The notes under the pieces are model-generated. The model was given only the letters and a program-made list of their open reading frames with translations, was not told the DNA's origin and did not search any database. This document shows, piece after piece, positions 41,971 through 57,480 of a stretch of DNA of 64,000 nucleotides. This stretch comes from Ramazzottius varieornatus (Eukaryota; Animalia; Tardigrada). A program made the translations under genes and the position numbers. The stretch is from positions 225,337 through 289,336 of the forward strand of contig BDGG01000010.1 of NCBI GenBank assembly GCA_001949185.1, read 5' to 3'. The number at the start of each line of letters is the position of its first letter. Positions within the stretch are counted from its first letter, which is position 1.

Positions 41971-43254
41971 CTTGAGCCAAGAAGAACATGAAGGGCTGTC
42001 TTGGAGTCGGAAGTCTTGCAAGTTGCAAGTCGAGACGAAAGAGGCGAAGATTTGAGGAAAAGTATTATAGAAATTGCAAAAGAAGGCAAGTGCAGCGGTG
42101 GACGGGTGATATATTCAGTGGATTATCCAAAACACGGAACGGCTTCGCAACCTCAAGCGCAGTCCAACTTTGGAACGGCGCTCAGTCGATTGATAGTTTT
42201 CATATGAAAAATACAGTTCCGAATGTCGTTCGAACACCAGGTCTCTTGTTCATTAGAGGTAGAATTCGCGCACTGATGATAAGTTTGCCCGTTGATATTG
42301 CGAGAGCTCCGCCCAAGAGGCTGGCCTTCCAGCGGAGCTTTAGAATGAATAATAGACCACTTGAGTCATCGTAGAAAGCTGTTCAGGCATTCTAAAGCCC
42401 TTAGATTGAGGCAAACTATAGCAAGCCTCAGCTTATGGCGGAAGATCAGAGAGAAATTTCTTGACACCGAAAGTGGTATCTACCATTGGTCATCTGCTAT
42501 ACGTACTGGCATAGCACATTATTATACCCTGTTGAATGCTGATCGTGCAGTGCCGTCAAGTGGTACTATCAGCAGGGTTATCAGTTCCATATTAATCAAT
42601 ACGCCAACATCTGCGAATGATAAGTACAGAATCGATTGATCGAATCCGAAATCACCACTCATGACTCATCAAAAACTTGGAAAAACTCGTTAAAACAATT
42701 AGAAAATTCAGAAAAGATCGGGGAGTCATCCTGAGTAAAGGATCGTGCTGTCTGGAGCTCGAGCTTCCTCTGATGAGTTCGCGATTCAGAGACCCTTGCG
42801 TAGTAGGCTGAATAAATCATCCGTCCACCGCTTAGAGCACGCAATCTGGCTCAGGGGCGCGTGGAGGTCCCGCGGATGGGTAAGGCCGATCAGCCTGTGA
42901 GGCTGGGAAAACCATGGTTTTGAGCCTCGAGGCTGACGAAAACTGTGAAGGAGCTTCACGAGGCTGAAAAAAACGAAAAAGCAGTATGGTACGCAAAAAG
43001 AATAATTCTATATGGAGCGTCATATAAAAGTACCTTGGTTTCTATTTGTCAATTTCACAGGTGGTGGTTACGCAGTTTCACGGTAAACTGAGCCTAATGA
43101 AGAGTTAGATCATCATAGAAACGTAGGAAAGTATAAAACATTAAGAGATAAGACAGAAAAATAGGTAAGACTGGAAACTAACAAAAGAAAGAAGAAAGAA
43201 GGAGACAGCAGAAGGAAAAGAAAAAGCAGGAGGGTCTCTGGCCCGCTGGACGCC

Positions 43255-43609
43255 TTACTTGTGGTTTTTAGCCACATTTCGGAGCTCCTCCATGCGAAGG
43301 ATGTCCATATCGGACGCGTCCGAGCAGTGGGACTTGCGTCGCTCCCGCCCAGACTTGCCACGACGGACACCGAACAACCAAACGAGTCCGCCCAAACCGA
43401 AAACCAACAAGGCCCCGATCACAATCAGGGCAATCTGACCTGGCGTGAGTCCTCCGGGATCCTGTTGGGATGGGGTGGTGGCAGGAACCTCGGGGATAGG
43501 TGGTGGCAGGAACCTCGGGGATAGGGGATAGGTGTGCTGTTGGTCGGCAGAGTGGTGGACGACCCGCTCGTGGTCATTGCGACCGTCGTCGTGGTGGCCA
43601 GGTCGACAA
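43255..43609 (-). pseudogene. Orphan terminal exon of a type I membrane protein (Thr-rich stalk, TM, tail)
   Basis: Acceptor, then VDLATTTTVAMTTSG... and, in a shifted frame, PGGLTPGQIALIVIGALLVFGLGGLVWLFGVRRGKSGRERRK...HK*; 7-nt and 25-nt tandem duplications (32 nt) break the frame. Confidence 0.6.
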
Positions 43610-43759
43610 CTAAAAACAAATCGTTTAAGTTGTCGCGGTGTCAGGCATTATGATAACAAGCGGCGAAATACTTTCATTGCATACTTTAACGCATGCAATG
43701 AAGGTACTTCGCCGCGTATTTGTAAGGGAAAACTATGTGACACCCATCCAACTTCTTGG

Positions 43760-45800
43760 GTACTTTTGCTGCATCCAGCGAACCCAAGTACAAGCCCGCC
43801 CAGGCCAACTTGCTACCACACATAAAGTTGAAGTGTTCTCGACCCGATCATCGTCCAGCTTCCAACCTAGTTTTCCTTGATTCAACATACTGTTTGCCAT
43901 CTCACCAAAAATTACTCGCTGGATAATCTGTCGGAATCGACATAGTACTAAAAAAAGGAGCGAGGCGAAGAATGCATCAACATTGACAGTTATTGCAACC
44001 GTTTTTGAAAATTATTTTTTCGGTTTCTTACAGACCTCCTGCGGTTTTGTTGTCGAGAAAAATTAGAAATAGGTCTGAGCTACAGAAAAGTGTGTCGAAA
44101 ACATGAATCCGTCGTTCGGAACCGGAGCTACAAATTCTCCCGCAAAACGGTTTTTCCGGCAAAGTGGCGGAGTTCCCTAGTTTCAATTCATTTGCCGAGT
44201 TAGTTCGATGTCCCTATGGCCGTTCCTGATTTTTACTGACAACTCAGATACTCAAAGGTGTACTGTCCTCAGACTGGGGATCGTAGCTCGCACCGAGAAT
44301 TCTGGAAAACTGTATTTCAGTAGCAGCGACATGTCGTACCCACCTTCGGTCGTATCAGACAGAATTTCAAAGCTATTTCTTAGTGTAAGCACAGGAGTTC
44401 TGTGCTAATCGAAACAGCTTGAAAAGTTTTCTGGACATCATGAACGAGTGCGCGGAAAAGATGCACTCTGAATTTTTTAACGCGAAAAGTCCAGGTGGTA
44501 GCAAGTTGGCCCGGGCAGGATATATTTTGGCGTTGTTAGCCTGGTAGGTCCCAGGCAGCATAATACCGACAACTGATGGGACTATTAATCAGTGCGCGTG
44601 CCGGAAAGTCTGTAGAGTTCTATCCAGACGTGAGTATCGCATATATCCCCGTACTCGGGATCTATCTTTCAGAAATGAAGGACCCACAAAACACAGGTCA
44701 GATTCCCGAGTACTGGGATATATGCCGAACTCACGGTTGGACAGAAGTCCACAGATTTTTGGCACGCGCATCGTTCAGCAATCCCATCGGTCGTCAAAAA
44801 ATATTTTGCTGCATCCAGCATCTAGCTCGGTCATCCATGCTGTAAAAGGCAAAACTCACTGGATGCAGCAAAATACTGACGACTGATGGGACTGTCCATC
44901 TAGGTGACTGCCGAGAAACTATTGGAGTTACCTCAAGACAAGGAGTTGGCAGACGTTGAAAAAACTACAGATATCTAGTCTGGAAAACCGAACTGGTACA
45001 AGTTCTCAACCATCCAGACTCGAGATCCGTAGCTATTCCAACGTCTGCCACCTTCGTATCTTGAAGTAACTACAAGAAGATTTTGGCAATCACACAGGTG
45101 TTCAGTCCCGTCGGAGATGGATAGTCAGCCAATTCCTCATAAATTCTGACGGGACAGCCCGAAGGAGTGAACATCACAATTTATGCTGAATATGACTGAA
45201 TATCCATCTCCGATTGGCCTGACCATCTATGAAGTTACCGAGAAACTACTCCGGCTGCGAGAAGACACACGGATGGCGGGTTTTTCAAAAGTTATAGATG
45301 AGTTCAGCACCATTCACGCCACGAACTATCCGGTGAACTGTGCGCATCTGCCAATCCGTCCATAACTTCTTGAAGTCCCGCCATCCGTGTATCTTCCCGC
45401 AGCCAGAGTACTTTCTCGATAACTGTATAGATGGTCAGGCCCAGCGGAGGTGGATATTCGGCCACATTCAGTGCGATTGTGCTGATCACTCCATCGAGCT
45501 GCAAAGAGATCTGCTCGTACTGAATGTGGCCAATTATCCATCGGCGCCTGGACTGACGACCATCAGGACCACCGCAAAACATTGAAAGCAGAATACTTGA
45601 CATATCTATACATCTCTAACGAGAGTGTATAGATCTGGCAAGTATTCTGGGTAAGAGATACAGAGATAAGTACTTGAAGAGCACCTACCTTGCTGAAAGT
45701 ATCCTTTGGGTCGAAGGATGGGAGGCATAGTGCCGCTGCTGTTTCCTACGAAGAAACGAACATCTTTCCAGCAAGGTAGGTGCTTTTCAAGTACTTATGT
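43760..45800. repeat. Array of long inverted repeats/hairpins inside the hAT element
   Basis: Hairpins at ~44575-44788, ~44885-45111, ~45184-45470, ~45591-45647 and ~45667-45798, plus long-range pairing of ~43795-43819 with ~44495-44520. Confidence 0.85.
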
Positions 45801-46553
45801 ATTCGTCCTTACCTTTGGATGGAAGTTTCGGCGGAAGACAAGTCGGAGCCGGCGATCTGCAGTAGGGACGGCGCACCGAAATATGCAAATTCAAAATGTA
45901 ATTTCTGAAAACAACAACAAACCAAACCGCGGGTGTCTACTGGACTTCCGCTTCGCATTATTGTTGCGAACTACTGGTTTTGTTTCCCGCTTTTCCGCGA
46001 CCACTGTGCACGTACTTCACTTAATTATGGGTCGGGACAAAATTATGGGCCACGCGTTTTTGAGCAAGCTAGAAGGCTGATTGTTTTGGGTCTCACCTAG
46101 GACCTTACAGCTCCATAAGCTATGTGACTAAACTTCAGTGGAGTCAAGCATTGCACTGATTTCCGACATAAACAGGTTCCCATTAATTGCGTCCATGCCC
46201 GTGATTAGACAAAGTACGTGTACAGACTCACTGGTTCTTCATTGATGGTGCATTTGATTCTCGTTAGCTCTCGGGAGTGGTTGGCGGCATATCCCTATGG
46301 TAGTTTGCACTTAACGCAGAGTCTTAGCCATCAAGTAAAACTGTTTAAGCTAAGATTCGCGTACGATGGTCTGGAAGGTACCCCCGTAAGCTCTTATCTG
46401 CGTCTGCAATGCATCGATCTCATACTGGACTGCACAATAGTGTTGTTTATTGGTTTTATTACGGAGATGAAAGTAGTAATGAAGATAATTCAACAACAGA
46501 TCGAACTAAACAAGAGCATCCATCGTGAGAAGTATTAAGCATCAAAAGTCTAA

Positions 46554-47443
46554 TTAAACGATGTTATTGTTTAGCAAGCCAAGAGGCTCCGACTCCATCG
46601 GAATGTTGTTCCGGCCAACGTTGGGAACTTCTCGTGCACTGCGGCGTCGTCGTTTGATGAGGAAAACCGTAACCAGGAAAAGGACAACAAGAATGGCCGA
46701 TGCACCTCCAGCAGCCAAGTAGGAACTCTCGCTGATAGCGGTGTCAACGCCTAAAATGAATTAGTAACGCAGATGTGTCAAAGAACGATGAGTCGTGCTA
46801 GTTTCTCACTTTTAATCGAAAGTTCCTTGATGGCGCGTCGCGGATCTTTTATAACGCCAAGGTTTGGACCATAGGTGACTGCAACCACGTACCAATGCCA
46901 GCTGTTGCCAATGCTGTCGGTGTTCAGAACGTAGTACCTGTAGAGAATAACATAAGCTTAGAGACGCTAGAGATAAAAACGTAGAACTTTGGATGACCTA
47001 GTTCCTCCGGTCTCTCGTAACAGCAGTGAATGCATTGGAAACATGTGATCAACGAAATGCTGCGTCCTTCCAACATTGACCAAGTTTTGAATAGCATAGG
47101 ACATATTGATGTTCATCCGGTTGGCCGCAAGCCGGATGACCTCTGTGCTAGACAACCAGCGGGTACTGCGAGCCCCAAGTCCCATAAAGCTTCGCCCGTT
47201 AATAACCACACTTCGCGTACTGACACCAGCGATCTCATCGTCAGAAACTTCCGCAAAAGGCAGTTCGGCATTGTGTAGCAAGGCTACAGCCCCCGCGGCT
47301 ATGAAGCCGCAAGCCGCTCCGTCCAACTGACCAGTGCGTATGGAATCCTGCACTGTAACCCCTGAAGCTCTCAGCCAGTCACGTAGCTGACCAGGAACTG
47401 GATCATTTCCCCAAAAGTCAATGATTCTGGCTGTATGCGTTAG
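46554..47443 (-). CDS. Putative cysteine-protease (Ulp1/C48-like) domain plus TM anchor, 3' of the transposase
   Basis: RIIDFWG...TGQLDGAACGFIA...RWLSSTEVI...|YYVLNTDSIGNSWHWYVVAV...|...SAILVVLFLVTVFLIKRRRR...NNIV*; exons 46810-46937 and 46554-46750 join in phase. Confidence 0.5.
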
Positions 47444-50400
47444 CTAAGGTAACTGGGCATCACCAAAGTTGGGAAAAAAAGGGAGTGTCGATGCAAGTTC
47501 CTGAATGTCGGCTTGGGGAACAGGTTCTTCACCCACCTCCAAGGGGAGCTCATCTGCAGTTATTGGGTCGTCCCCATCTTCTGCGTTATCAAGCTGAGCA
47601 CCGCTAGCGCCTGTTTGTTGCTCGTTGTCTAGCTCATCCAGAAATCTCTCACACTGTTGCTGCAGTTCTTTCCATTCTGGGTTCTGATCCATGGTTTCTT
47701 TGATGACAGTTTTTTTGACGAACCCGAAAGCCCGTTTGTCGTCAACAAAAATCTCACGTTTACACGGCCGGACGTAACTGCCTGAAATCCGACGATAAGG
47801 ATGATCGTCAAAGTATCGTCTCACTACCTCTGCTGGATCGATAACCCGGTTCTTGTGAAAAGCAATCAAAGCGAGTGCGTTCAGCCTGTCTTGTAACATG
47901 ACTGTCCGAAGCCTCGTTTTGATTCTCTTCAAACCGGAAAATGATCGCTCGTTGCTTGCTGTTGTAACTGGTACCACTGCAAAAATATCCAAGAGAACGC
48001 GAATGTTGGGATACAATCTACGCGGGCAGTTTTTCAGGGCCTCGCTAACGGTGTGCGGTAGGCGACCGATATGATGACTGATTAACCCATCTTGTGAGTT
48101 CCGAGGGGAAGTCTTCCGGACTGGAAAGGTCTGTGCGGTACATGTCGATCACGGGAGAGAACGAAGCAGCACCGGTAATATCCTGCCTGTTTTTTAGAAG
48201 CAAACTGGGAATGAGGAAAGCCATCTGGGAGAGAACTCCAGAACGTTTGCTAAACCTGACGGCAAGTTGGTTCATCATGTGGGTCAAGATCGGACGAGCG
48301 ACACGGTTACACATTGTATCGTAGGTGTCGTTGATGTTGCCTGTCTCGTTGCTTGGTCGGATGTTGTACTTTTGCAGTAGCCCAGTAGCTTTCGTCCAGG
48401 CTTTATGGTATACCGAATCTACAACAAGGGAGAAAACAGTTAAATAATTTCTTAGCACTTAGTCCTATAACCTTTTTTGAATGCAGTAGGAATAGTTACT
48501 GGGATATCGAGACCAGTAAGCAAATATTCAAAGACTAATTGTCAATCGGATTCGCCTAAATATACCTTCTTGTTCGAGTGTGGTGTTCCACGCTGATAAT
48601 GTTTGTTGGATTGTACCAATTTGGCGCATAGCCATAACATACTCATATGAGTCCCTTGTCTGAAGTGCGTCGCTGGCTGTCCTGGTGAGACCGAGGAACT
48701 CTTCCGCAATCTGAAGAAAACGCATGCAGTGAGTCATGCATATCGCCGTGAAATACCTACCGCTGCAGTGAGAACGGCTTCAAAGTCAAGCAAGCGGTTT
48801 AGAAGCAAGCGCGCGTCTTCCCTCGTACCTTCCTCCTGAAAAATGCTGCTCGGACCGGCGATCGACCCTAACGCTTGGACAATAGCATGATATAGCTCGA
48901 GGAAGGTCTCCGTGCTGGACGACAGTTCGGACCATCTGGTCGTACATGGAGTACTGACAGCATTCTTTTTCTGATTTAGTTTCTCAGCTTTCTCTCGCAA
49001 GACTGCTCCACGTTTCGCACTGCTGAAAAAGTTGCTCCACGTTTCGCACTGCTCCCAAATCCTTTAGTAACTTGACGTGCCGACCAAACTGTCCTGGCTG
49101 TTTCCTTTAGCGCTAGATTCAGCGAATGAGACCAGCAGTGAACGTACACCGCAAGAGGTTGCAGTTGCGAGATACGACCGTTTACACCAATATGGTGGCC
49201 GAAAAAATTTGGCCCCGCGTCATACCCCTGGCCACGAAGCCGCCGAATATCCAAGCCCAACGCCTTCAAACGGTCCATGATTACCCTGGTCAACTCTTCG
49301 CCTGTAACCACACAAAAGCGTCGTTGAGAAAGCACTGAAGAAGTTTACCGAAATTTGGAATGTTTGCACTGCAGTGGCACCTGTTGTTGGAAGACTTGCG
49401 TCGATGAACTCGAGGAACTCTTCGCGTATCTCCCCATCTTCCATTGTGTACCGTAGGATCAGAGAAAGCTGGTCCAGACCTCCTTCATCCGTAGTTGTGT
49501 CTAGTAGAAGAGAGTAGAATGGACTGGCGTGGACTTCCTTCACGATCTGTTCCTGGATCATGATTCGAATAATGTTCAACAGATCATCCTGCGGACCGTC
49601 AGTGACGTATAAAGAGTTTGCAGGACTCTGTTCGAGGTGTTCGCGTAGACCTGCAGTAACGCGGTTCATCGATATAAGTAACTGGGATCGACCAACTACG
49701 AGCTATCCTACAATAACACTGACCTGCATCCCCCGCGTCCTTCATCATGCACAGCAATGCGTTAAGTACACCGAACCTAAAATCGGTAAGCTGGTAGAAG
49801 TCCTCCACAGGTACAGGTGCATGGTTATCCTCGTGACCGCGCAGTGGAAGACCTAGTCTGACCGCTGTTATAATTGCTTTGACAATACTGGTTACGCCTT
49901 TTACGATACGCTGCCTAATTCGGAGCCCATTTCCCGTTCCTTGCGCGGCAACCGCCACATCGACAGGAAGTGTCCTGGCGTCCGGTTGTCTGTAAGTAAC
50001 ATATCGTGTTGTTGGGAAGGCGCCGATTATATGCAAGGGAGAAGCATATGGTTAAGCCGCTGTTATCAGCCAGATTCATTTTTCTCCAAAACTCATCGCT
50101 CTTACCTGAAATACTCTTCAATATGGATTACAGCATCGGTATGGTAGGAGGCTTCCTTGTGAGCTTTAATTTTAATTAGTGGGTTTTTAAAGTCTTCTAG
50201 TGGCCGGTGGACCATATACTGACGGCTGCTGTTCTGTCTCTGCCTGCCAAATCCGATGCTATAGTACTTGCAAAACACTCCGTTCTTCTTTCTGGACCAG
50301 ACTAGCCATGGGTTACTGGTTAGCCATTCTCTCTGAAAAATTCTCCGCTGGCGCCCATTGCCCGTGCTGGGAAATGTGAAGCTTGTGGGTGGTACCCATG

Positions 50401-51105
50401 GACTCTCGATTTTTTGCCGAATAACGGACCCTGGAATCGAAGCCAGTGGTACGGTTATCCATTCCCCAATGTCGGCTTCGGAAGGGCTCTCGGGCGCTGC
50501 CGACGTTGTGGTGGTCACGGTTGGGGGCCGGTCACTTTCATCCATAACGTCACAAGAGGGATTCCTGTTAGTTAGCTGCGGTGGAAAGTGCACGGGCAAC
50601 AGCGGGCACGAGTTTTCCAAAGTATTCATTTCAACATCGTTGCAAGTGGTGGAAAAGCCTAACAAGAATCCGCATATTGAGTAATGAGAACATGTGTGAT
50701 GCTTTAAATACCCTGTACGGTCATTGTGCGCATCTCCGTACCGGTGGTTGCTTCCGTTGTTGAAGAAGATGGCAGACCTTGAGGGGTAGATTCGTCCTCC
50801 AGGGTTTTTGATGTCGAAGACTCTGTTGTCTGGATGGAAAACTGCGACATTTTTTGTTGGATGGTTCGGCGTTTGGTGGGAGGACCAACAGGCAGGGCTT
50901 GACCGTCGCGCTTCGCCGACGAGACGGATGGAAGAGCCATGTCGTAGCAGGACTCCGGCAAGGGTTGCCTATTCAGCCATGACCGTGCCTCGTTCAGTGG
51001 GGCCTCGGCAGAATACGCAATGTTAGGAGAGCCTGGTGTTGGCACCCCATACTCAAACATGGCTTCGGAACCCTTGTCAAAGCGTGACATGGAAGAGTCG
51101 TACAT
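47444..51105 (-). pseudogene. hAT transposase (TTF-type Zn finger, DUF4371-like, DDE core, hATC dimerisation; ZMYM1/THAP12-like), frameshifted
   Basis: FQREWLTSNPWLVWS...GVFCKY; LPLRGH; YSLLLDTTTD..LDQL; RGQGYDAG; HCWSHSLNL; TTRW; YPNIRVLLDIFAVVPVTTASNERSFSGLKRIKTRLR..M.QDRLNALAL; frame disruptions at ~48080 and ~49004-49053 (21-bp duplication). Confidence 0.9.
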
Positions 51106-51188
51106 CTTCCACGTTACCTTGAAATGAACGCAGGCACCAATAATCCTTCGAGTCTTTAGTGCATCTGATCCAACTTAGTTTATTTTAC

Positions 51189-51815
51189 TTACCTCGCCGA
51201 AGGTGAATCCATCAGTGGCATTCTCGCATGGTCCACAAAAAAAGGAACAAACTCGACGAGCTTTTCGTTTTGCAGGTCTGCTTCAGCGTCAAATGGGCGG
51301 TGTACAGTGCGATCACCCACAGGAACAAACTTAACTCCTTTATACAGAGCCACAGTTCCCATAAAGTTTCGGGAAGGTAGAAGCTCTCGACAAGAGCCCA
51401 CACTGTAGTTGAGCCCACCAGGACATTGCAAAATATCAGTCTTGTCGTATATACCGTGAAGTAGAAACGCATCTTGGTCATACGGGACCTGACTTGTTAG
51501 ACCGTCTCCGGATGACAAAGGCAGAACGATCCTGGACTTGAGTGACTGACGATCCCAAATAACAATGTGGTAAGAGTCGAGATTATGGTGGATGGATCCT
51601 GACAACTCCCGCTTGGTCCGTCCATCGCATACCTGCTCTATCTCCACGTATCCTCCTATTGCATAAACTTTGCCGGAGTGAACAACTGCACTATTGCAAT
51701 TTATTTCTGCAATCCGGTACGTACAGCATTGTCCGTGAAAAACACTATCAAAAATTACAACAAAGAGGAAAAACCGGCACATGTTTAGGTAGCTAATGTA
51801 CTTTGACAGAACCAC
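51189..51815 (-). CDS. Unknown cargo ORF in the hAT element (hydrophobic N-terminus, GKVYAIGG, RTKR)
   Basis: 208-aa open frame ending at a strong AG|GTAAGT donor. Confidence 0.45.
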   Translation of the reverse strand: MVLSKYISYLNMCRFFLFVVIFDSVFHGQCCTYRIAEINCNSAVVHSGKVYAIGGYVEIEQVCDGRTKRELSGSIHHNLDSYHIVIWDRQSLKSRIVLPLSSGDGLTSQVPYDQDAFLLHGIYDKTDILQCPGGLNYSVGSCRELLPSRNFMGTVALYKGVKFVPVGDRTVHRPFDAEADLQNEKLVEFVPFFVDHARMPLMDSPSAR

Positions 51816-52321
51816 GCCACAGAATACTGCAAAATATTCTGTCCTCCCTTTATGTATACCAGAAGCTCATTTGATACGCACATAATTAACAACCGTAATA
51901 AGTTATGAATCCGTGAGGCACAGTTTAATCGCACTGAAGCATCCGGTCCTTCTTTTAATTTCGCCCGTCGGAGATTTGTAATCGACGAATTATTCTTAAT
52001 CGTGAGCATTTTGCGAATTTTAAAAGTCCCAGGTTCGTTATACATGTCAAACTGTCGAACTGGAGGTTGTCGACGTGACTAATAACGCTAACTTTCGATC
52101 TAAAGCATAGTAATGATAGTCATTTGTTCAGATTATGATTTTTTTGCCCATATTTCATCCAGATACTCCACACTTGAGCAACGCCGCATTTTCCGCGCAT
52201 TATTTGCAGACTTCACTGCGTGCCTGTCTTAACATCTCAGCGAAGTTTTTTGTATAGTTATCCTTCACGAGATTAAAGTTAACAGTCCACTTCATACTGT
52301 ACACGCGCGTGGCCTAAATGT

Positions 52322-52445
52322 GAGCATGGACAAAACTGTGGGCCACGGAACGAAGACGGCACGGGCCAGCCGGGGTTGACCAATCCATTAAATCAATCGG
52401 AGCAGCGCCGCTTTCACTCCGTGGCCCACAGTTGTGCTCATGCCC
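52322..52445. mobile_element. Small palindromic MITE (TIR G(A/G)GCATG..CA.AACTGTGGGCCACGGA); related degenerate copy at ~46029-46200
   Basis: AACTGTGGGCCACGGA and TCCGTGGCCCACAGTT form an inverted pair; no TSD seen. Confidence 0.55.
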
Positions 52446-52649
52446 AGAAGTAGGCGTGTGTACTGGTAGTTACGTTCAAAAACCGGTCAGAATGGCTAAC
52501 AGGTAAAAAAAAATTTTCGGCCAGCCAGAGGCTGCTACCTTTGCTTCCATTTTCCCAGCTATTTTCCCAGCCTGTCGAGGCTGAGAATTTGGACTTTGGG
52601 ACAGGCTGAGTCTCGTCAGCCTTATGGGTCAACGCGCCCCTGATCTGGC

Positions 52650-53076
52650 TAGAGCCCTGCAGCAGTAGCTGAAACCAGTGCTGCTTCTGCACTGCATCGG
52701 GTTTCCAGAAACTGCAACTGCACTGCATCTGCAATTTTCTGCTGTTTTCCAAACTGCAACTGTACCGCACTGCACTGCATTTAAAAATTCAGAGTTTCTG
52801 CCGGTCAGCGGAAATACATGTCAAACACATCGTAAACGTCATTGTTCTACGGAGATTTAACCCAAAAACGGTAGAATCCAGCCAGAAAATGCAGAAAAAG
52901 CTGATTTTGCTATTGTTTTAAGGCAACAAAAGTATACTGCGACGAACGGTGCTCCTTTTTTCAAAGCTGCAACAGCACTGCACCTACACTTTCTCACCAT
53001 TTCGGCGACTGCAACTGCACTGCATTGCAGGAAAATGCAGCGCAGTGCAGAACGTACCGCATGTTGCAGGGCTCTA
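52650..53076. mobile_element. hAT-type MITE with TIR TAGAGCCCTGCA and CTGCA/TGCAG subterminal repeats
   Basis: 12-bp perfect TIR; TSD AATCTGGC at 53077-53084 and, displaced by the later large insertion, at 42843-42850. Confidence 0.88.
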
Positions 53077-54649: not shown

Positions 54650-57480
54650 AAGCCGTTCTTTGTGGTCTGCATCACACAGTAACTACAGCGGCTGCTTACA
54701 CTCGTATCAAATCATCCACAATTTCCGGAAAATCATGGAGACCCTGCGTGTTCAAGTGGTAATAATTTCAAGCGCCTGTCAGCCAGCAGTCCTTCAGGAT
54801 AATGCGGCAAGCAGGGGGCAGCGGCTTCTCGGTAGGCCTGATCCTTGACGGGATGTGGAGATTCAGCAATTCTCACGCCGACAGCCGGATGTTGGACCAC
54901 AGTAAAAATCGCGGTGAACTCCCAGTTGCAGAGCTGTGTTCCTTGATGGCTTCCACCAGCATATCGCGTACGTCGCTTGGTCCGACGAACGTTTCACCAT
55001 TCCCTGCCAACAAACAAGTCTTTTTATCAGTGCACAAATGGGTATCTCCATATGAGAATGCGTCCGAATAGTTTCAGATCAAATTGTTCAGGAGATCGTG
55101 CCGAAGTTTCTGCACCCTCAGGCTAAACTCAAATGCGACTTTTACCTACACTAAACAAACTCTAGGGGACTCAAATCCGGAGTCAGATTCAACTTCCAAC
55201 CACAGGTCAGAGAGTTACAAAGGAAGAGATGAGAGCGCCGAAGCCCTATATATGCGCTCCACGGATCAGTACGCACAACGCTATGCGCTCTGATGTTTAA
55301 TCGGTCAATCAGATGCAGAAACTGATACGAGTATGTGTACCGGAAGTGATCGCTGGTGCACGTCTCCAGCTAAAGCATGTTGCAAGTTGGAAAGACTCGC
55401 CCTTAGAACCCTTGCATTTTTCCGAGTTGTAACTCTATATTTTTCGGCCAATCGTTCCGGTCTGATTACTGTACTGGATAGCATGACGATCATGATCAGC
55501 GAAATTTTTTCTGTACTCGTACCGAATATTAATACTCCCCGACGCCGTTGAGCGCTTGCTTGAGCGTTGAACCATCCTTTGATTGTTTCGGGGAAGTCAT
55601 CGTAGTAGCTGTAAAAAACATTGCTGGTGACCTTCAATCAGTGATTGCGCCGTTGGATTTTTGTCAAGCTGACGGCGAGATGGTTGGAATCAAACACTCT
55701 GCTCAACACGAGTTGCCAGTTTTGCGAGACTCTGTAACAACACAAATGCTACATAGCAATGGAAAACGGCGGACCATGCTGTTGTGCCATTATGTTAATA
55801 CACTGTATACATAACGTTATAGTTTGTCACATACCGTCGATAATGATAGCGTAGTACGCGCAGTACTCGTCAAGGTCCGCCATTCTTAGCCAGTTATAAT
55901 GTCTGCGGTCACTGTTTTATCGATACGGAACACTAAAAGCACAGTGGGTGCCACAGCTCGACCATCGTGGCGAGAGCAAGCAAAGCCACTCAAGCAGGGT
56001 GAGTGCCATCGGCCTTCGGAACAATGATGCGATACATCATTCCTCTGGCCGGGAGCTTTATTGCAAGACCGGCCAGGCAGACATGCATCACGGCACAGTC
56101 TCCTGCAAGGGAGACTGAACTGGGCCTGCATTCGATGTTGGTCGTGGCTGTCTTGCACGAGAGCATAGATTTATAACAGTGTGGTCCTGCTTCGTTCTGG
56201 CAACCTTTGGTGCTGACAAGACCAACTAGATAACTAGGCAATCTAGGCGGTCTTGATTCTGGCACGGTAATACATGTTAGCCACGACCCTCTAGTTAATA
56301 TATATATCGTGGTTTTCGTATGCGTTTGAACAAAGCCGCGGGACTTTGAAGATTTATCCCCAATCCACTCATTCGACTGTATGGTTTTACTGTACGTACA
56401 TCAGTCAGATCGGCGCGTAGAGCTGCCTGTTGGCAAATTCCCAATCGGTGTACGGTAGCGCACCATCCATCAAACATCATTTTTTGGTCAACACCGGACT
56501 ATGTGGGCAACGAGTTTACGGCCTGTGTTCCCTTGAAGATTTCTTCAAACGTACCTCCCGGAAAAATCACCGATGCGTCCCAGCCCGGTCCGTCTCTTGG
56601 TCGTTTGGGTCGCACGATCACCAGCTATGTATTCCAGCAATGATAGCTTCACATCGTTTTTCTTTGGAAGATAACTCTACGCCCTGTCTTTTAACGGGTC
56701 TTCATCACCCTACTTCAAGTGCAGCTCAATGTTTCCAAAACTGGCAGGTCTTCTAAATGGCGCATCGTTTAGAGGCTGCTCTGATTTGTCCGAGTCACCG
56801 TATATATGCAACCACGGTCAGTAAAGTCTCGTCCCTCGCCCGAAGTTCGCTACGATGCCAACTCTCCTCGGCACCGGCGCTCTCTTCGCGGGCTACCGTC
56901 AGCTTGCAAGACAGACGGTTGATGGGGTGGAAAAGGGGACTGCGCAGATCGAGCTCACCTTCGAGACCAAAGAAAATTACTTGTCCTGCTCCTGCAGTCG
57001 TACGAGAAAATATTCCTTCTAACACTAAACTGTATTCTCGTACAATGTCATGCTCTTCGTTTCTTTCCTTTTTCTCTTTAGTTTTACGTGTACCAATTCT
57101 TGCCCCTTCGAGCTTTGTCACCGCACTCGGGGTTGGTTGAACGACCTGTACCTTCCGCATTGGTCACGCCAACCGGTCCTGTCGACCTACATGTATGCCT
57201 TCGGAGTGCGAAGCAGTCATCCCAGATTTGAAATGTTACCTCGGGGAGTTCTTCAAACCACGACTGAGACCCGGAGTCCGTCCTACTGATTCAAACAGCG
57301 CACTCGTAAGGACGATATTAGCCCATCGTAAAGCCAGCTCATCGTTGACGTTTCTTGTTCGGTTCTTTGTAGGTTAGTCAGGCAGCTTGATGGAGTCGTT
57401 CTGCTCTTTGGTACGGTGTTTAGCTTAGCGGCGTACTTGGGGCGCAAAACCTGACTCGATTACAACGTGCATCATCATCG
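54650..57480 (-). pseudogene. Decayed paralog of the 13.6-15.7 kb F-box-like gene
   Basis: RVSQNWQLVLSRVFDSNHLAVSL...IKGWFNAQ...RGVLIFG and FLLWSNIRLSA*ELLNLHIPSR...IILKDCWLTG align with RVSQNWRLVLTKAFKTNHLSISL...IDEWFAAQ...RGILMIG and FYMWTNVQLSAWDVLYMHTPSR...LVLSNCWLTG; several stops; 5' limit uncertain. Confidence 0.65.

What the first reader, a model, noticed from the sequence alone, without database searches (positions are those of the whole stretch)
46554..47446. Transposase-linked, apparently circularly permuted Ulp1-like protease with a membrane anchor
Seen: in frame after the hATC domain and an acidic linker come RIIDFWG, then QLDGAACGF, then WLSSTEVI, then VLNTDSIGNSWHWYVV, then a TM helix and KRRRR. 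One TAG at 47444-47446 intervenes; it could be a nonsense mutation, be removed by an intron, or be read through (TAG-CTA context). Established: C48/Ulp1 proteases run WLxxxxI...HW...D...Qxxx(x)xCG, and Ulp1 domains are known passengers of Mutator, CACTA and Ginger elements. Inference: here the blocks are rotated (D, Q-C, WL, HW), giving a permuted SUMO/ubiquitin-like protease on a hAT. It might counter SUMO-dependent silencing or release the transposase from a membrane tether.
Basis: partly seen in the sequence, partly recalled or inferred. Interest (0 to 1): 0.85.

Follow-up and report, generated by a model that had tools for sequence, protein, structure and literature searches.

The report
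hAT transposase with membrane-anchored protease tail
A jumping gene (hAT transposon) in the tardigrade Ramazzottius varieornatus ends its transposase with a previously unclassified cysteine-protease-like domain, closest in shape to OTU ubiquitin-removing enzymes, followed by a membrane anchor; this particular copy is broken, and the 'rotated Ulp1' idea is possible but not shown.

Summary
On the minus strand the hAT dimerisation domain and acidic linker, a TAG, and three GT..AG-bounded exons carry the quoted motifs, a TM helix and KRRRR. They lie inside a 9.8-kb hAT element with an 11-bp TIR and an 8-bp TSD.

The TAG is a nonsense change private to this copy: two sister copies read CAG. This copy also has a 5-bp frameshift before the hATC domain.

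The module is conserved: four copies here, a 27%-identical paralogue, and nine clusters among 1.8 billion proteins. Metagenomic relatives carry hATC, linker, domain and, in two lineages, the TM plus basic tail. One member follows a PIF1 helicase.

Asp, Cys and His-Trp are invariant or nearly so. No Pfam family matches.

An alignment to C48 in the permuted register forms, but at P = 0.036.

Verdict: a new, divergent papain-fold (OTU-like) isopeptidase module on a hAT transposase, with a membrane anchor. 'Permuted Ulp1' remains a minority rival. An earlier first-reader note (s1-789837) reports the same reading on another piece of this genome.

The parts
42852..52642 (-). Whole hAT element (9,791 bp) that carries the gene. 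The 8-bp target-site duplication ATCTGGCT lies at 42844-42851 and 52643-52650.
   Evidence: Copy boundaries from the own-genome DNA search; ends read directly; agrees with note s1-789731.
42852..42862 (+). Left terminal inverted repeat, CAGGGGCGCGT.
52632..52642 (-). Right terminal inverted repeat, CAGGGGCGCGT on the minus strand.
48045..51189 (-). Upstream transposase exons (DUF4371-type hAT), interrupted by spliced introns. A 5-bp deletion near 48076 relative to the C1 copy shifts the frame before the hATC domain in this copy.
   Evidence: Seven GT..AG joints on the minus strand: 48418>48566, 48710>48761, 49300>49380, 49647>49721, 49989>50106, 50657>50741, 51113>51189. DUF4371 E 2.3e-8 in the annotated protein P0014. 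The deletion is seen in the copy alignment.
47447..48016 (-). hAT C-terminal dimerisation domain followed by the acidic linker, which contains the conserved TLPxFPxP-like motif.
   Evidence: PF05699 E 1.6e-6; translation; linker motif conserved across relatives.
47444..47446 (-). In-frame TAG, a nonsense change private to this copy. Copies C1 and C19 read CAG at this position.
   Evidence: Alignment of copies. Contigs identical to the window cover it unspliced. Contigs from other copies read G at 47446.
46998..47443 (-). Peptidase-like domain, first exon. Candidate residues: Asp codon 47417-47419 (RIIDFWG), Gln 47327-47329, Cys 47309-47311 (ACG), Trp 47156-47158 (WLSSTEV).
   Evidence: Modelled at pLDDT about 90 in the proxy P0003.
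46938..46997 (-). Intron 1 (60 nt, GT..AG).
   Evidence: Sequence. Acceptor used in run X1's contig ending at 46937. Spliced this way in the database proteins P0003 and P0014.
46810..46937 (-). Peptidase-like domain, second exon. His codon at 46895-46897 and the following Trp at 46892-46894 (NSWHWYVV).
46751..46809 (-). Intron 2 (59 nt, GTGAG..AG).
   Evidence: Joint 46749>46809 (cut +1) in contigs of runs X6 and X8.
46554..46750 (-). Last exon. TM helix at about 46656-46712, KRRRR at 46641-46655, a 29-residue tail, and stop TAA at 46554-46556.
   Evidence: Translation; hydropathy 2.62 over 19 residues. An equivalent TM plus basic stretch occurs in P0002 and in L015 7724-7936.

Best explanation
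Window 46554-47446 (minus strand) is the C-terminal accessory module of the transposase gene of a 9.8-kb hAT DNA transposon of Ramazzottius varieornatus.

In intact relatives one polypeptide runs: DUF4371-type hAT transposase, hATC dimerisation domain, acidic linker, a ~175-residue papain-fold cysteine peptidase-like domain, then a single TM helix followed by a basic cluster and a short tail.

The peptidase-like domain has the ordinary papain/OTU order. A Cys sits at the start of a helix and a His-Trp at the start of the last strand. An invariant Asp lies on the first strand, 36 residues before the Cys, and a Gln lies 5-6 residues before it.

I read it as a very divergent OTU-like isopeptidase (a deubiquitinase or ubiquitin-like-protein protease). 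It is the same kind of accessory domain that Ginger1 transposases, Mutator elements and Helitrons carry. It would act on ubiquitin-type marks on the transposase or on host factors, while the TM helix ties the protein to a membrane.

Shown here: the gene anatomy, the fusion, the conservation, the fold class and the transcription.

Inferred: catalytic competence, the substrate, the role of Asp92, and the membrane topology and target membrane.

The window copy itself is a pseudogene (a 5-bp frameshift before hATC plus the TAG). The sister copies are also damaged, and the copies diverge neutrally.
For: Anatomy and element ends.

Fusion: CAG in sister copies and a 299-aa open frame in C19. P0006/P0010 hold hATC, linker and domain in one ORF, on 4 metagenome contigs. 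P0002 holds the hATC end, domain, TM and RRRKNK in one ORF. A TM exon lies after the P0010 ORF.

Transcription: 8 GT..AG joints, and one 2,013-nt contig that spans the TM exon through to an upstream transposase exon.

Conservation of Asp, Cys, His-Trp and Gln.

Precedent: C-terminal OTU or Ulp1 domains on Ginger1 transposases, Ulp1 in Mutator, OTU in Helitrons (PMC2836005). Helitron-encoded VTD DUBs are active on ubiquitin and NEDD8 probes (PMC9741609). A family member follows a PIF1 helicase gene.
Against: No sequence-level link to OTU. Pfam PF02338 misses all members and all loci, and hhalign against a tardigrade OTU gives P = 0.65.

OTUs usually place the acidic residue after the His or right before the Cys. 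Here the only invariant Asp is 36 residues upstream.

Protein-language-model neighbours of the paralogue are C48 clusters, not OTU.

No activity, substrate or localisation data exist. The ubiquitin co-folding gave no verdict.

All four copies in this genome are defective, and dN/dS among them is about 1. Function can therefore only be argued from the older conservation between lineages.
Confidence: 0.6

Rival explanations
1. The domain descends from a C48 (Ulp1/SENP) protease by circular permutation, cut open at the hairpin between the His strand and the Asp strand. The order therefore becomes Asp, Gln-Cys, WL helix, His-Trp.
For: Motif-level fit (C48 motifs recalled from the Ulp1 and SENP literature, not tested here): [IV]DF[WY]G resembles YxDSL; Gln 6 residues before Cys-Gly-[FY] resembles Q.N..DCG[VI][FY]; RWLxxxE[VI] resembles WLNDxxI; LNT....HW resembles PIN...HW.

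The order of predicted secondary-structure elements is strand(Asp)-helix-strand-Gln/Cys-helix ... helix(WL)-strand-helix-strand-strand(HisTrp). From my recollection of Ulp1, this equals the Ulp1 order rotated.

The domain ends about 10 residues after the His. A third triad residue therefore cannot follow it, and the invariant Asp sits at the end of the first strand.

hhalign of the family against a doubled alignment of two tardigrade C48 proteins gives one alignment in the permuted register. In it Gln/Cys, WL and HisTrp co-align, score 20.7 against 17.5 undoubled, P = 0.036.

The nearest named clusters of the paralogue in the ESM Atlas are all Peptidase_C48 (0.84-0.91; 182 shared features).

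C48 is classed as a papain fold with a permuted helix, and a permuted relative of Lot-type OTUs (LupA) exists (PMC10318531).
Against: No C48, adenain or other CE-clan chain is among the top 50 of 48,161 chains for either model.

P = 0.036 is not significant, and the Asp motif did not co-align. The C-terminal half alone finds nothing in tardigrade C48 proteins.

The Pfam C48 model gives no partial hits.

The Atlas neighbours of the window's own subfamily are C39, C58 and IpaJ-type peptidases at weak scores, not C48.

WLSSTEVIRLA aligns equally well to the OTU helix WGSQVELRALA.

This reading needs an extra evolutionary event that the OTU reading does not.
Confidence: 0.2
2. A rival on function, compatible with either fold reading. 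The domain is a self-processing protease. The transposase is made as a membrane-tethered precursor, and the protease cuts in the linker, in cis or in trans, to release it for nuclear entry.
For: The protease sits exactly between the transposase and the TM anchor in three lineages.

A conserved TLPxFPxP-like motif lies about 20 residues upstream of the domain in nearly all members, including the helicase-linked one.

A DNA transposase tied to a membrane needs some way to reach chromatin (inference).
Against: No Gly-Gly or other recognisable cleavage site is conserved in the linker.

The linker motif is modelled at high confidence as packed on the domain rather than as a free substrate loop (pLDDT 83-92 for residues 60-80).

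The L005-type paralogue and the helicase-linked members show no TM segment in the sequence available.

The invariant His-Trp points to a Ub/UBL tail as substrate (inference from DUB literature).
Confidence: 0.12
3. The domain is not a peptidase. It is a generic alpha/beta (flavodoxin/CheY-like or thioredoxin/DsbA-like) module with a conserved Cys used for something else, for example redox chemistry or metal or ligand binding.
For: Foldseek's best rows for both models are DsbA-type oxidoreductases (E 0.005-0.04).

Against: There is no CxxC. A single Cys is conserved together with His-Trp and Asp.

The only matches that cover the whole domain are papain-fold DUBs.
Confidence: 0.06
4. The protease and TM exons are a separate captured host gene, a passenger, that is not really part of the transposase protein.
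For: The TAG in this copy. The public annotation needs an ad hoc intron to join them (P0014). A transcript from outside the element splices into the domain's second exon. Note s1-789856 reads another copy as sharing an exon with a membrane protein gene.
Against: The TAG is private to this copy. Uninterrupted ORFs across hATC, linker, domain and TM exist in other organisms. A second, 27%-identical hAT family in the same genome has the same acidic linker plus domain in frame. No free-standing cellular homologue was found among 1.8 billion representatives.
Confidence: 0.04

Closest known systems
OTU-family deubiquitinases, especially Legionella Lot-type OTUs (Lem27/Lpg2529, PDB 7BU0, MEROPS C119)
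   Different: No detectable sequence or profile similarity. There is an extra N-terminal strand-helix unit that carries an invariant Asp. The motif is Cys-Gly rather than Gly-Asn-Cys-[LF]. The context is eukaryotic transposons.
Ginger1 transposases with a C-terminal OTU or Ulp1 domain; Ulp1 domains of Mutator-like elements; OTU and VTD deubiquitinase domains of Helitrons/Helentrons (PMC2836005, PMC9741609)
   Same: A Ub/UBL-protease-type thiol peptidase encoded by, and often fused to the C-terminus of, the transposition protein of a eukaryotic DNA transposon. One member of the present family is linked to a PIF1 helicase.
   Different: The host element is a hAT. The full-text search of the library held here found only one paper naming both 'hAT transposase' and Ulp1, which I did not open. 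The peptidase matches neither the OTU nor the C48 Pfam model. It lacks the Asp-x-His motif that defines VTDs. A TM anchor plus basic tail follows the peptidase.
Ulp1/SENP (MEROPS C48, Pfam PF02902)
   Same: His-Trp, a Gln 5-6 residues before Cys-Gly-aromatic, a W-L helix, and an Asp at the end of a strand. Language-model neighbours of the paralogue are C48 clusters.
   Different: The sequence order is Asp, Gln-Cys, then His, not His, Asp, Gln-Cys. There is no profile hit and no structural hit in the top 50.
A20-type OTUs (recalled from the literature, not tested here)
   Same: The acidic triad residue lies about 33 residues N-terminal of the catalytic Cys rather than after the His. This resembles the Asp-to-Cys spacing of 36 here.
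   Different: No A20, Cezanne or TRABID structure appeared in the lists. This is a lead only.

Membership tests
Peptidase C48 (Ulp1/SENP), Pfam PF02902 | Significant match to the family profile | tested here: not met
   No PF02902 hit for the exons, the paralogue or 10 relatives at E <= 10. The six-frame scan of the genome with PF02902 at E <= 10 finds 4 other loci and none of these.
Peptidase C48 (Ulp1/SENP), Pfam PF02902 | Catalytic residues in the order His, Asp, Gln, Cys | tested here: not met
   The order is Asp92, Gln122, Cys128, His246 in all members. It would be met only after a circular permutation, which is not demonstrated (P = 0.036).
Peptidase C48 (Ulp1/SENP), Pfam PF02902 | CE-clan fold recognisable against solved Ulp1, SENP or adenain structures | tested here: inconclusive
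   None appears in the top 50 of two exhaustive VIA-align searches. The aligner is sequential, however, and could show at most half of a permuted relative.
Peptidase C48 (Ulp1/SENP), Pfam PF02902 | Hallmark residues: His-Trp, Gln before Cys-Gly, Trp of the WL helix | tested here: met
   H246-W247 in 13 of 14 sequences, Gln at -5/-6 in 13 of 14, Cys-Gly in 13 of 14, W179 in 12 of 14. These residues are not unique to C48.
OTU deubiquitinases, Pfam PF02338 / MEROPS C85, C119 | Significant match to the family profile | tested here: not met
   No PF02338 hit. The genome scan at E <= 10 finds 8 other loci. hhalign against a tardigrade OTU gives P = 0.65.
OTU deubiquitinases, Pfam PF02338 / MEROPS C85, C119 | Papain fold with Cys at a helix start near the N-terminus and His on a C-terminal strand; similarity to solved OTUs | tested here: met
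OTU deubiquitinases, Pfam PF02338 / MEROPS C85, C119 | Cleaves ubiquitin (or UBL) isopeptide bonds | not testable with these tools
   Co-folding with tardigrade ubiquitin gave no verdict. This is not evidence either way.
VTD / herpesviral tegument DUBs (MEROPS C76) | Invariant Asp-x-His motif (PMC9741609) | tested here: not met
hAT superfamily DNA transposon | 8-bp target-site duplication and short terminal inverted repeats | tested here: met
   TSD ATCTGGCT on both sides and an 11-bp perfect TIR, CAGGGGCGCGT. The copy boundaries coincide with these ends.
hAT superfamily DNA transposon | Transposase with the hAT C-terminal dimerisation domain | tested here: met
   PF05699 at E 1.6e-6 in window 47447-48016. 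DUF4371 at E 2.3e-8 in P0014.
Tail-anchored membrane protein | A single hydrophobic helix close to the C-terminus and no N-terminal signal peptide | tested here: inconclusive
   The 19-mer has mean hydropathy 2.62, lies 34 residues from the C-terminus and is followed by KRRRR. The same layout occurs in P0002 and L015. The N-terminus was not analysed for a signal peptide, and no topology predictor is on hand.

The most novel reading that the evidence does not exclude
A protease-gated, membrane-parked transposase. The whole hAT transposase is held on a membrane by its C-terminal anchor. The anchor's strongly basic flank would suit an organelle or nuclear-envelope tail anchor. The papain-fold domain between transposase and anchor, possibly a re-permuted C48, cuts the protein free in cis or in trans. 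Transposition would then be licensed by a proteolytic step, as membrane-tethered transcription factors are.
Probability: 0.1. Interest if true: 0.85.

Novelty: new variant of a known kind. Interest (0 to 1): 0.55.

Why it matters
Transposon-encoded ubiquitin/SUMO-type proteases are known on Mutator, CACTA, Ginger and Helitron elements. What they do for the element is still unknown, and only the Helitron VTD class has been shown to be active.

This family adds three things:
- a hAT host element;
- a peptidase so divergent that no profile library recognises it, with only nine clusters in 1.8 billion proteins, although it models confidently;
- a conserved membrane anchor on a DNA transposase, which is hard to reconcile with a nuclear enzyme and points to regulated localisation or release.

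It also offers a clean test case for whether OTU-like and Ulp-like folds interconvert by permutation in nature. For annotation, the tardigrade gene model RvY_14182 splices out a conserved catalytic-candidate motif in order to avoid a private stop codon.

Tried and rejected
- Pfam scans of the exons, the paralogue and 12 relatives found nothing for the domain.
- phmmer and hmmsearch against PDB sequences found nothing.
- A scan of IMG/VR for relatives found none.
- Two attempts to harvest a deep C48 alignment from tardigrade C48 genes returned only 3 and 4 close relatives. The profile-profile tests therefore rest on shallow profiles.
- The ESM Atlas gave conflicting leads: C48 for the paralogue, and C39, C58, IpaJ and GGGtGRT at weak scores for the window's subfamily.
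- Complex prediction of the domain with tardigrade ubiquitin gave no verdict (score 0.00, controls not run). I do not count this for or against binding.
- The annotated intron that skips the TAG (P0014, P0016) is rejected. Contigs identical to the window run through it unspliced. It removes the invariant Asp motif, and it is predicted only in the two copies that carry a defect there.
- Stop-codon read-through is rejected as unnecessary, because sister copies have CAG.
Full report
**What is in the sequence**

The gene reads on the minus strand. From 48016 one frame gives the hAT dimerisation domain (PF05699, E 1.6e-6) and an acidic linker. TAG follows at 47446-47444, then RIIDFWG, QLDGAACGF and WLSSTEVI.

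A 60-nt GT..AG intron (46997-46938) leads to YYVLNTDSIGNSWHWYVV. A 59-nt GTGAG..AG intron (46809-46751) leads to a last exon. That exon holds a 19-residue hydrophobic helix (mean hydropathy 2.62), KRRRR, a 29-residue tail and the stop at 46556-46554.

All of this lies inside a 9,791-bp hAT element, 42852-52642. The element has a perfect 11-bp TIR (CAGGGGCGCGT) and an 8-bp target duplication (ATCTGGCT). This agrees with note s1-789731.

The genome is Ramazzottius varieornatus. Exact-match look-ups return its GenBank proteins.

**The stop codon and the state of the copies**

The genome holds four copies of the module.
- At the TAG, copies C1 and C19 read CAG. The stop is therefore a private nonsense change, not a recoding signal or an intron.
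- The window copy also lacks 5 bp near 48076 relative to C1, which shifts the frame before hATC.
- C1 has a 1-bp deletion in the linker, a TGA in the domain and a mutated intron-1 donor.
- C19 and C7 are internal-deletion derivatives that lost the transposase but kept the module.
- Among copies, dN/dS is about 1 and equals the non-coding divergence. This is the usual neutral decay of inserted copies.

The public model RvY_14182 (P0014) avoids the TAG with an intron that deletes the invariant Asp motif. Contigs identical to the window run straight through that stretch.

**Transcription**

Contigs of four runs were laid on 46300-52200. Two runs carry eight joints with GT..AG on the minus strand, so they derive from RNA.

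One 2,013-nt contig covers 46588-46749, 46809-48418 and 48566-48710. It therefore links the TM exon, the domain, the linker, hATC and an upstream transposase exon. That contig reads G at 47446 (CAG) and is about 2% different from the window, so it comes from another copy or strain. It retains intron 1.

**A conserved, transposon-bound family**

A 27%-identical intronless paralogue lies on the same scaffold (L005 1300-1893). It has the same motif order in a single ORF, preceded in frame by its own acidic linker and, further up, by hAT transposase remnants.

A search of 1.84 billion representative proteins found nine clusters, the others from metagenomes.
- P0006/P0010 is a 612-aa uninterrupted ORF on four contigs. 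It holds hATC, an acidic linker and the domain. A TM plus basic exon follows it in L015.
- P0002 carries the hATC end, the domain, a TM helix and RRRKNK in one ORF.
- P0015 follows a PIF1 helicase gene.

Conservation across the family:
- Asp92, Trp106, Gly111, Val114, Gly129 and Ala132 are invariant.
- Cys128 and His246-Trp247 are present in 13 of 14 sequences.
- A Gln sits 5-6 residues before the Cys in 13 of 14.
- A TLPxFPxP-like motif recurs in the linker.

**What fold it is**

No Pfam, PDB-sequence or viral match exists.

The annotated C19 protein P0003 served as proxy. AlphaFold2 with the 14-sequence alignment gave pLDDT about 90 for residues 60-258. A second model, of the paralogue, gave pTM 0.81.

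- Both alignments span the whole domain.

Next come Lpg2529, OTUD2, OTUD3, OTUB1, Wolbachia and nairovirus OTUs, the M48 and VTD tegument-type DUBs, staphopains, C39 peptidases and UfSP.

In both models the His is 8 residues from the aligned end, as the catalytic His304 of Lem27 is (PMC7669269).

**Permuted Ulp1 or OTU-like?**

- The Gln-to-Cys spacing, Cys-Gly-aromatic, Asp at a strand end, the WL helix and His-Trp all resemble C48.
- The predicted order of secondary-structure elements equals the Ulp1 order rotated (my recollection of Ulp1; inference).
- The language-model neighbours of the paralogue are C48 clusters.

But the evidence against it is heavier.
- The Pfam C48 model gives nothing.
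- The family's C-terminal half finds nothing in tardigrade C48 proteins.
- The permuted-register alignment to a doubled C48 alignment reaches only P = 0.036.
- The window subfamily's Atlas neighbours are other papain-like families.
- The WL..E helix aligns as well to the OTU WG..E helix.

C48 is itself classed as a papain fold with a permuted helix, and a permuted relative of Lot OTUs (LupA) is known (PMC10318531). A re-permuted C48 and a divergent OTU would therefore look alike in a sequential aligner.

I give about 0.5 to an OTU-like lineage, 0.2 to a permuted C48, and the rest to another papain-like origin or to no peptidase at all. The re-ordered peptide has no reference, so it was not sent to any tool.

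**How it probably works**

Shown: a Cys at a helix start, a His-aromatic pair on the last strand, and an invariant Asp, in a fold shared with Ub/UBL proteases. The domain is fused after a transposase and before a membrane anchor.

Inferred: a thiol isopeptidase acting on ubiquitin-type modifications of the transposase or of host factors. This has been proposed for the OTU and Ulp1 domains of Ginger1, Mutator and Helitron elements (PMC2836005) and shown for Helitron VTDs (PMC9741609).

The anchor with its basic flank suggests a tail-anchored protein. Cis-release of the transposase is an attractive but untested alternative.

Co-folding with tardigrade ubiquitin gave no verdict.

**Verdict**

This is a new variant of a known kind of transposon accessory domain. 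It is notable for its divergence and for its membrane anchor.

An earlier first-reader note (s1-789837) made the same reading on another piece of this genome.

Noticed in passing
window 54699-54729 joined to 46937: A contig of run X1, identical to the window, joins an exon that ends at 54700 (donor GTAAGC, outside the element) to the acceptor of the domain's second exon at 46937. It then runs on unspliced to 46414. This is a chimeric transcript that skips 7.7 kb, including most of the transposon.
   Followed up: partly
window about 48039-48076: The window copy lacks 5 bp present in copy C1 (GGAGG on the minus strand), which puts hATC out of frame with the upstream transposase exon. The RNA-type contigs of runs X6 and X8 carry the extra 5 letters but lack 5 letters at 48039. 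They match none of the four assembled copies exactly.
   Followed up: partly
window 47353-47550 (annotated intron of RvY_14182 = P0014; also in RvY_01267 = P0016): The public gene models remove the stretch that holds the private TAG (or, in C1, the 1-bp deletion). With it goes the invariant RIIDFWG motif. No contig supports this intron.
   Followed up: yes
L005 1300-1893 (G000:C10:85276-85866) and G000:C13:1294843-1295325: A second, 27%-identical hAT-linked family with the same domain. It is intronless, has its own acidic linker in frame, and shows no hATC and no TM exon in the copies seen. The C13 copy has an internal TGA.
   Followed up: partly
G000:C7:682370-689655 and G000:C19:462979-469274: Internal-deletion derivatives of the element. 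Their breakpoints correspond to window 47388/49923 and 47756/50309. Both lost the transposase core but kept the protease and TM end and both termini.
   Followed up: partly
L037 341-4133: On a metagenome contig a member of the family (P0015) sits directly after, and overlaps, a PIF1 helicase ORF, behind a proline-rich linker. The domain is therefore shared between hAT and helicase-bearing (Helitron-like?) elements.
   Followed up: partly
linker, window about 47447-47500; P0003 residues 60-85: A TLPxFPxP-like motif about 20 residues before the domain is conserved in nearly all members and is modelled at pLDDT 83-92. Its role (part of the fold, docking site or cleavage site) is unknown.
   Followed up: no
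L022 1153-2052 (G000:C2): A canonical-order C48 gene of the tardigrade (P0017; Hypsibius homologue P0018) carries a Cys-rich C-terminal extension. It has very few relatives in the 5.8-billion-protein collection.
   Followed up: no
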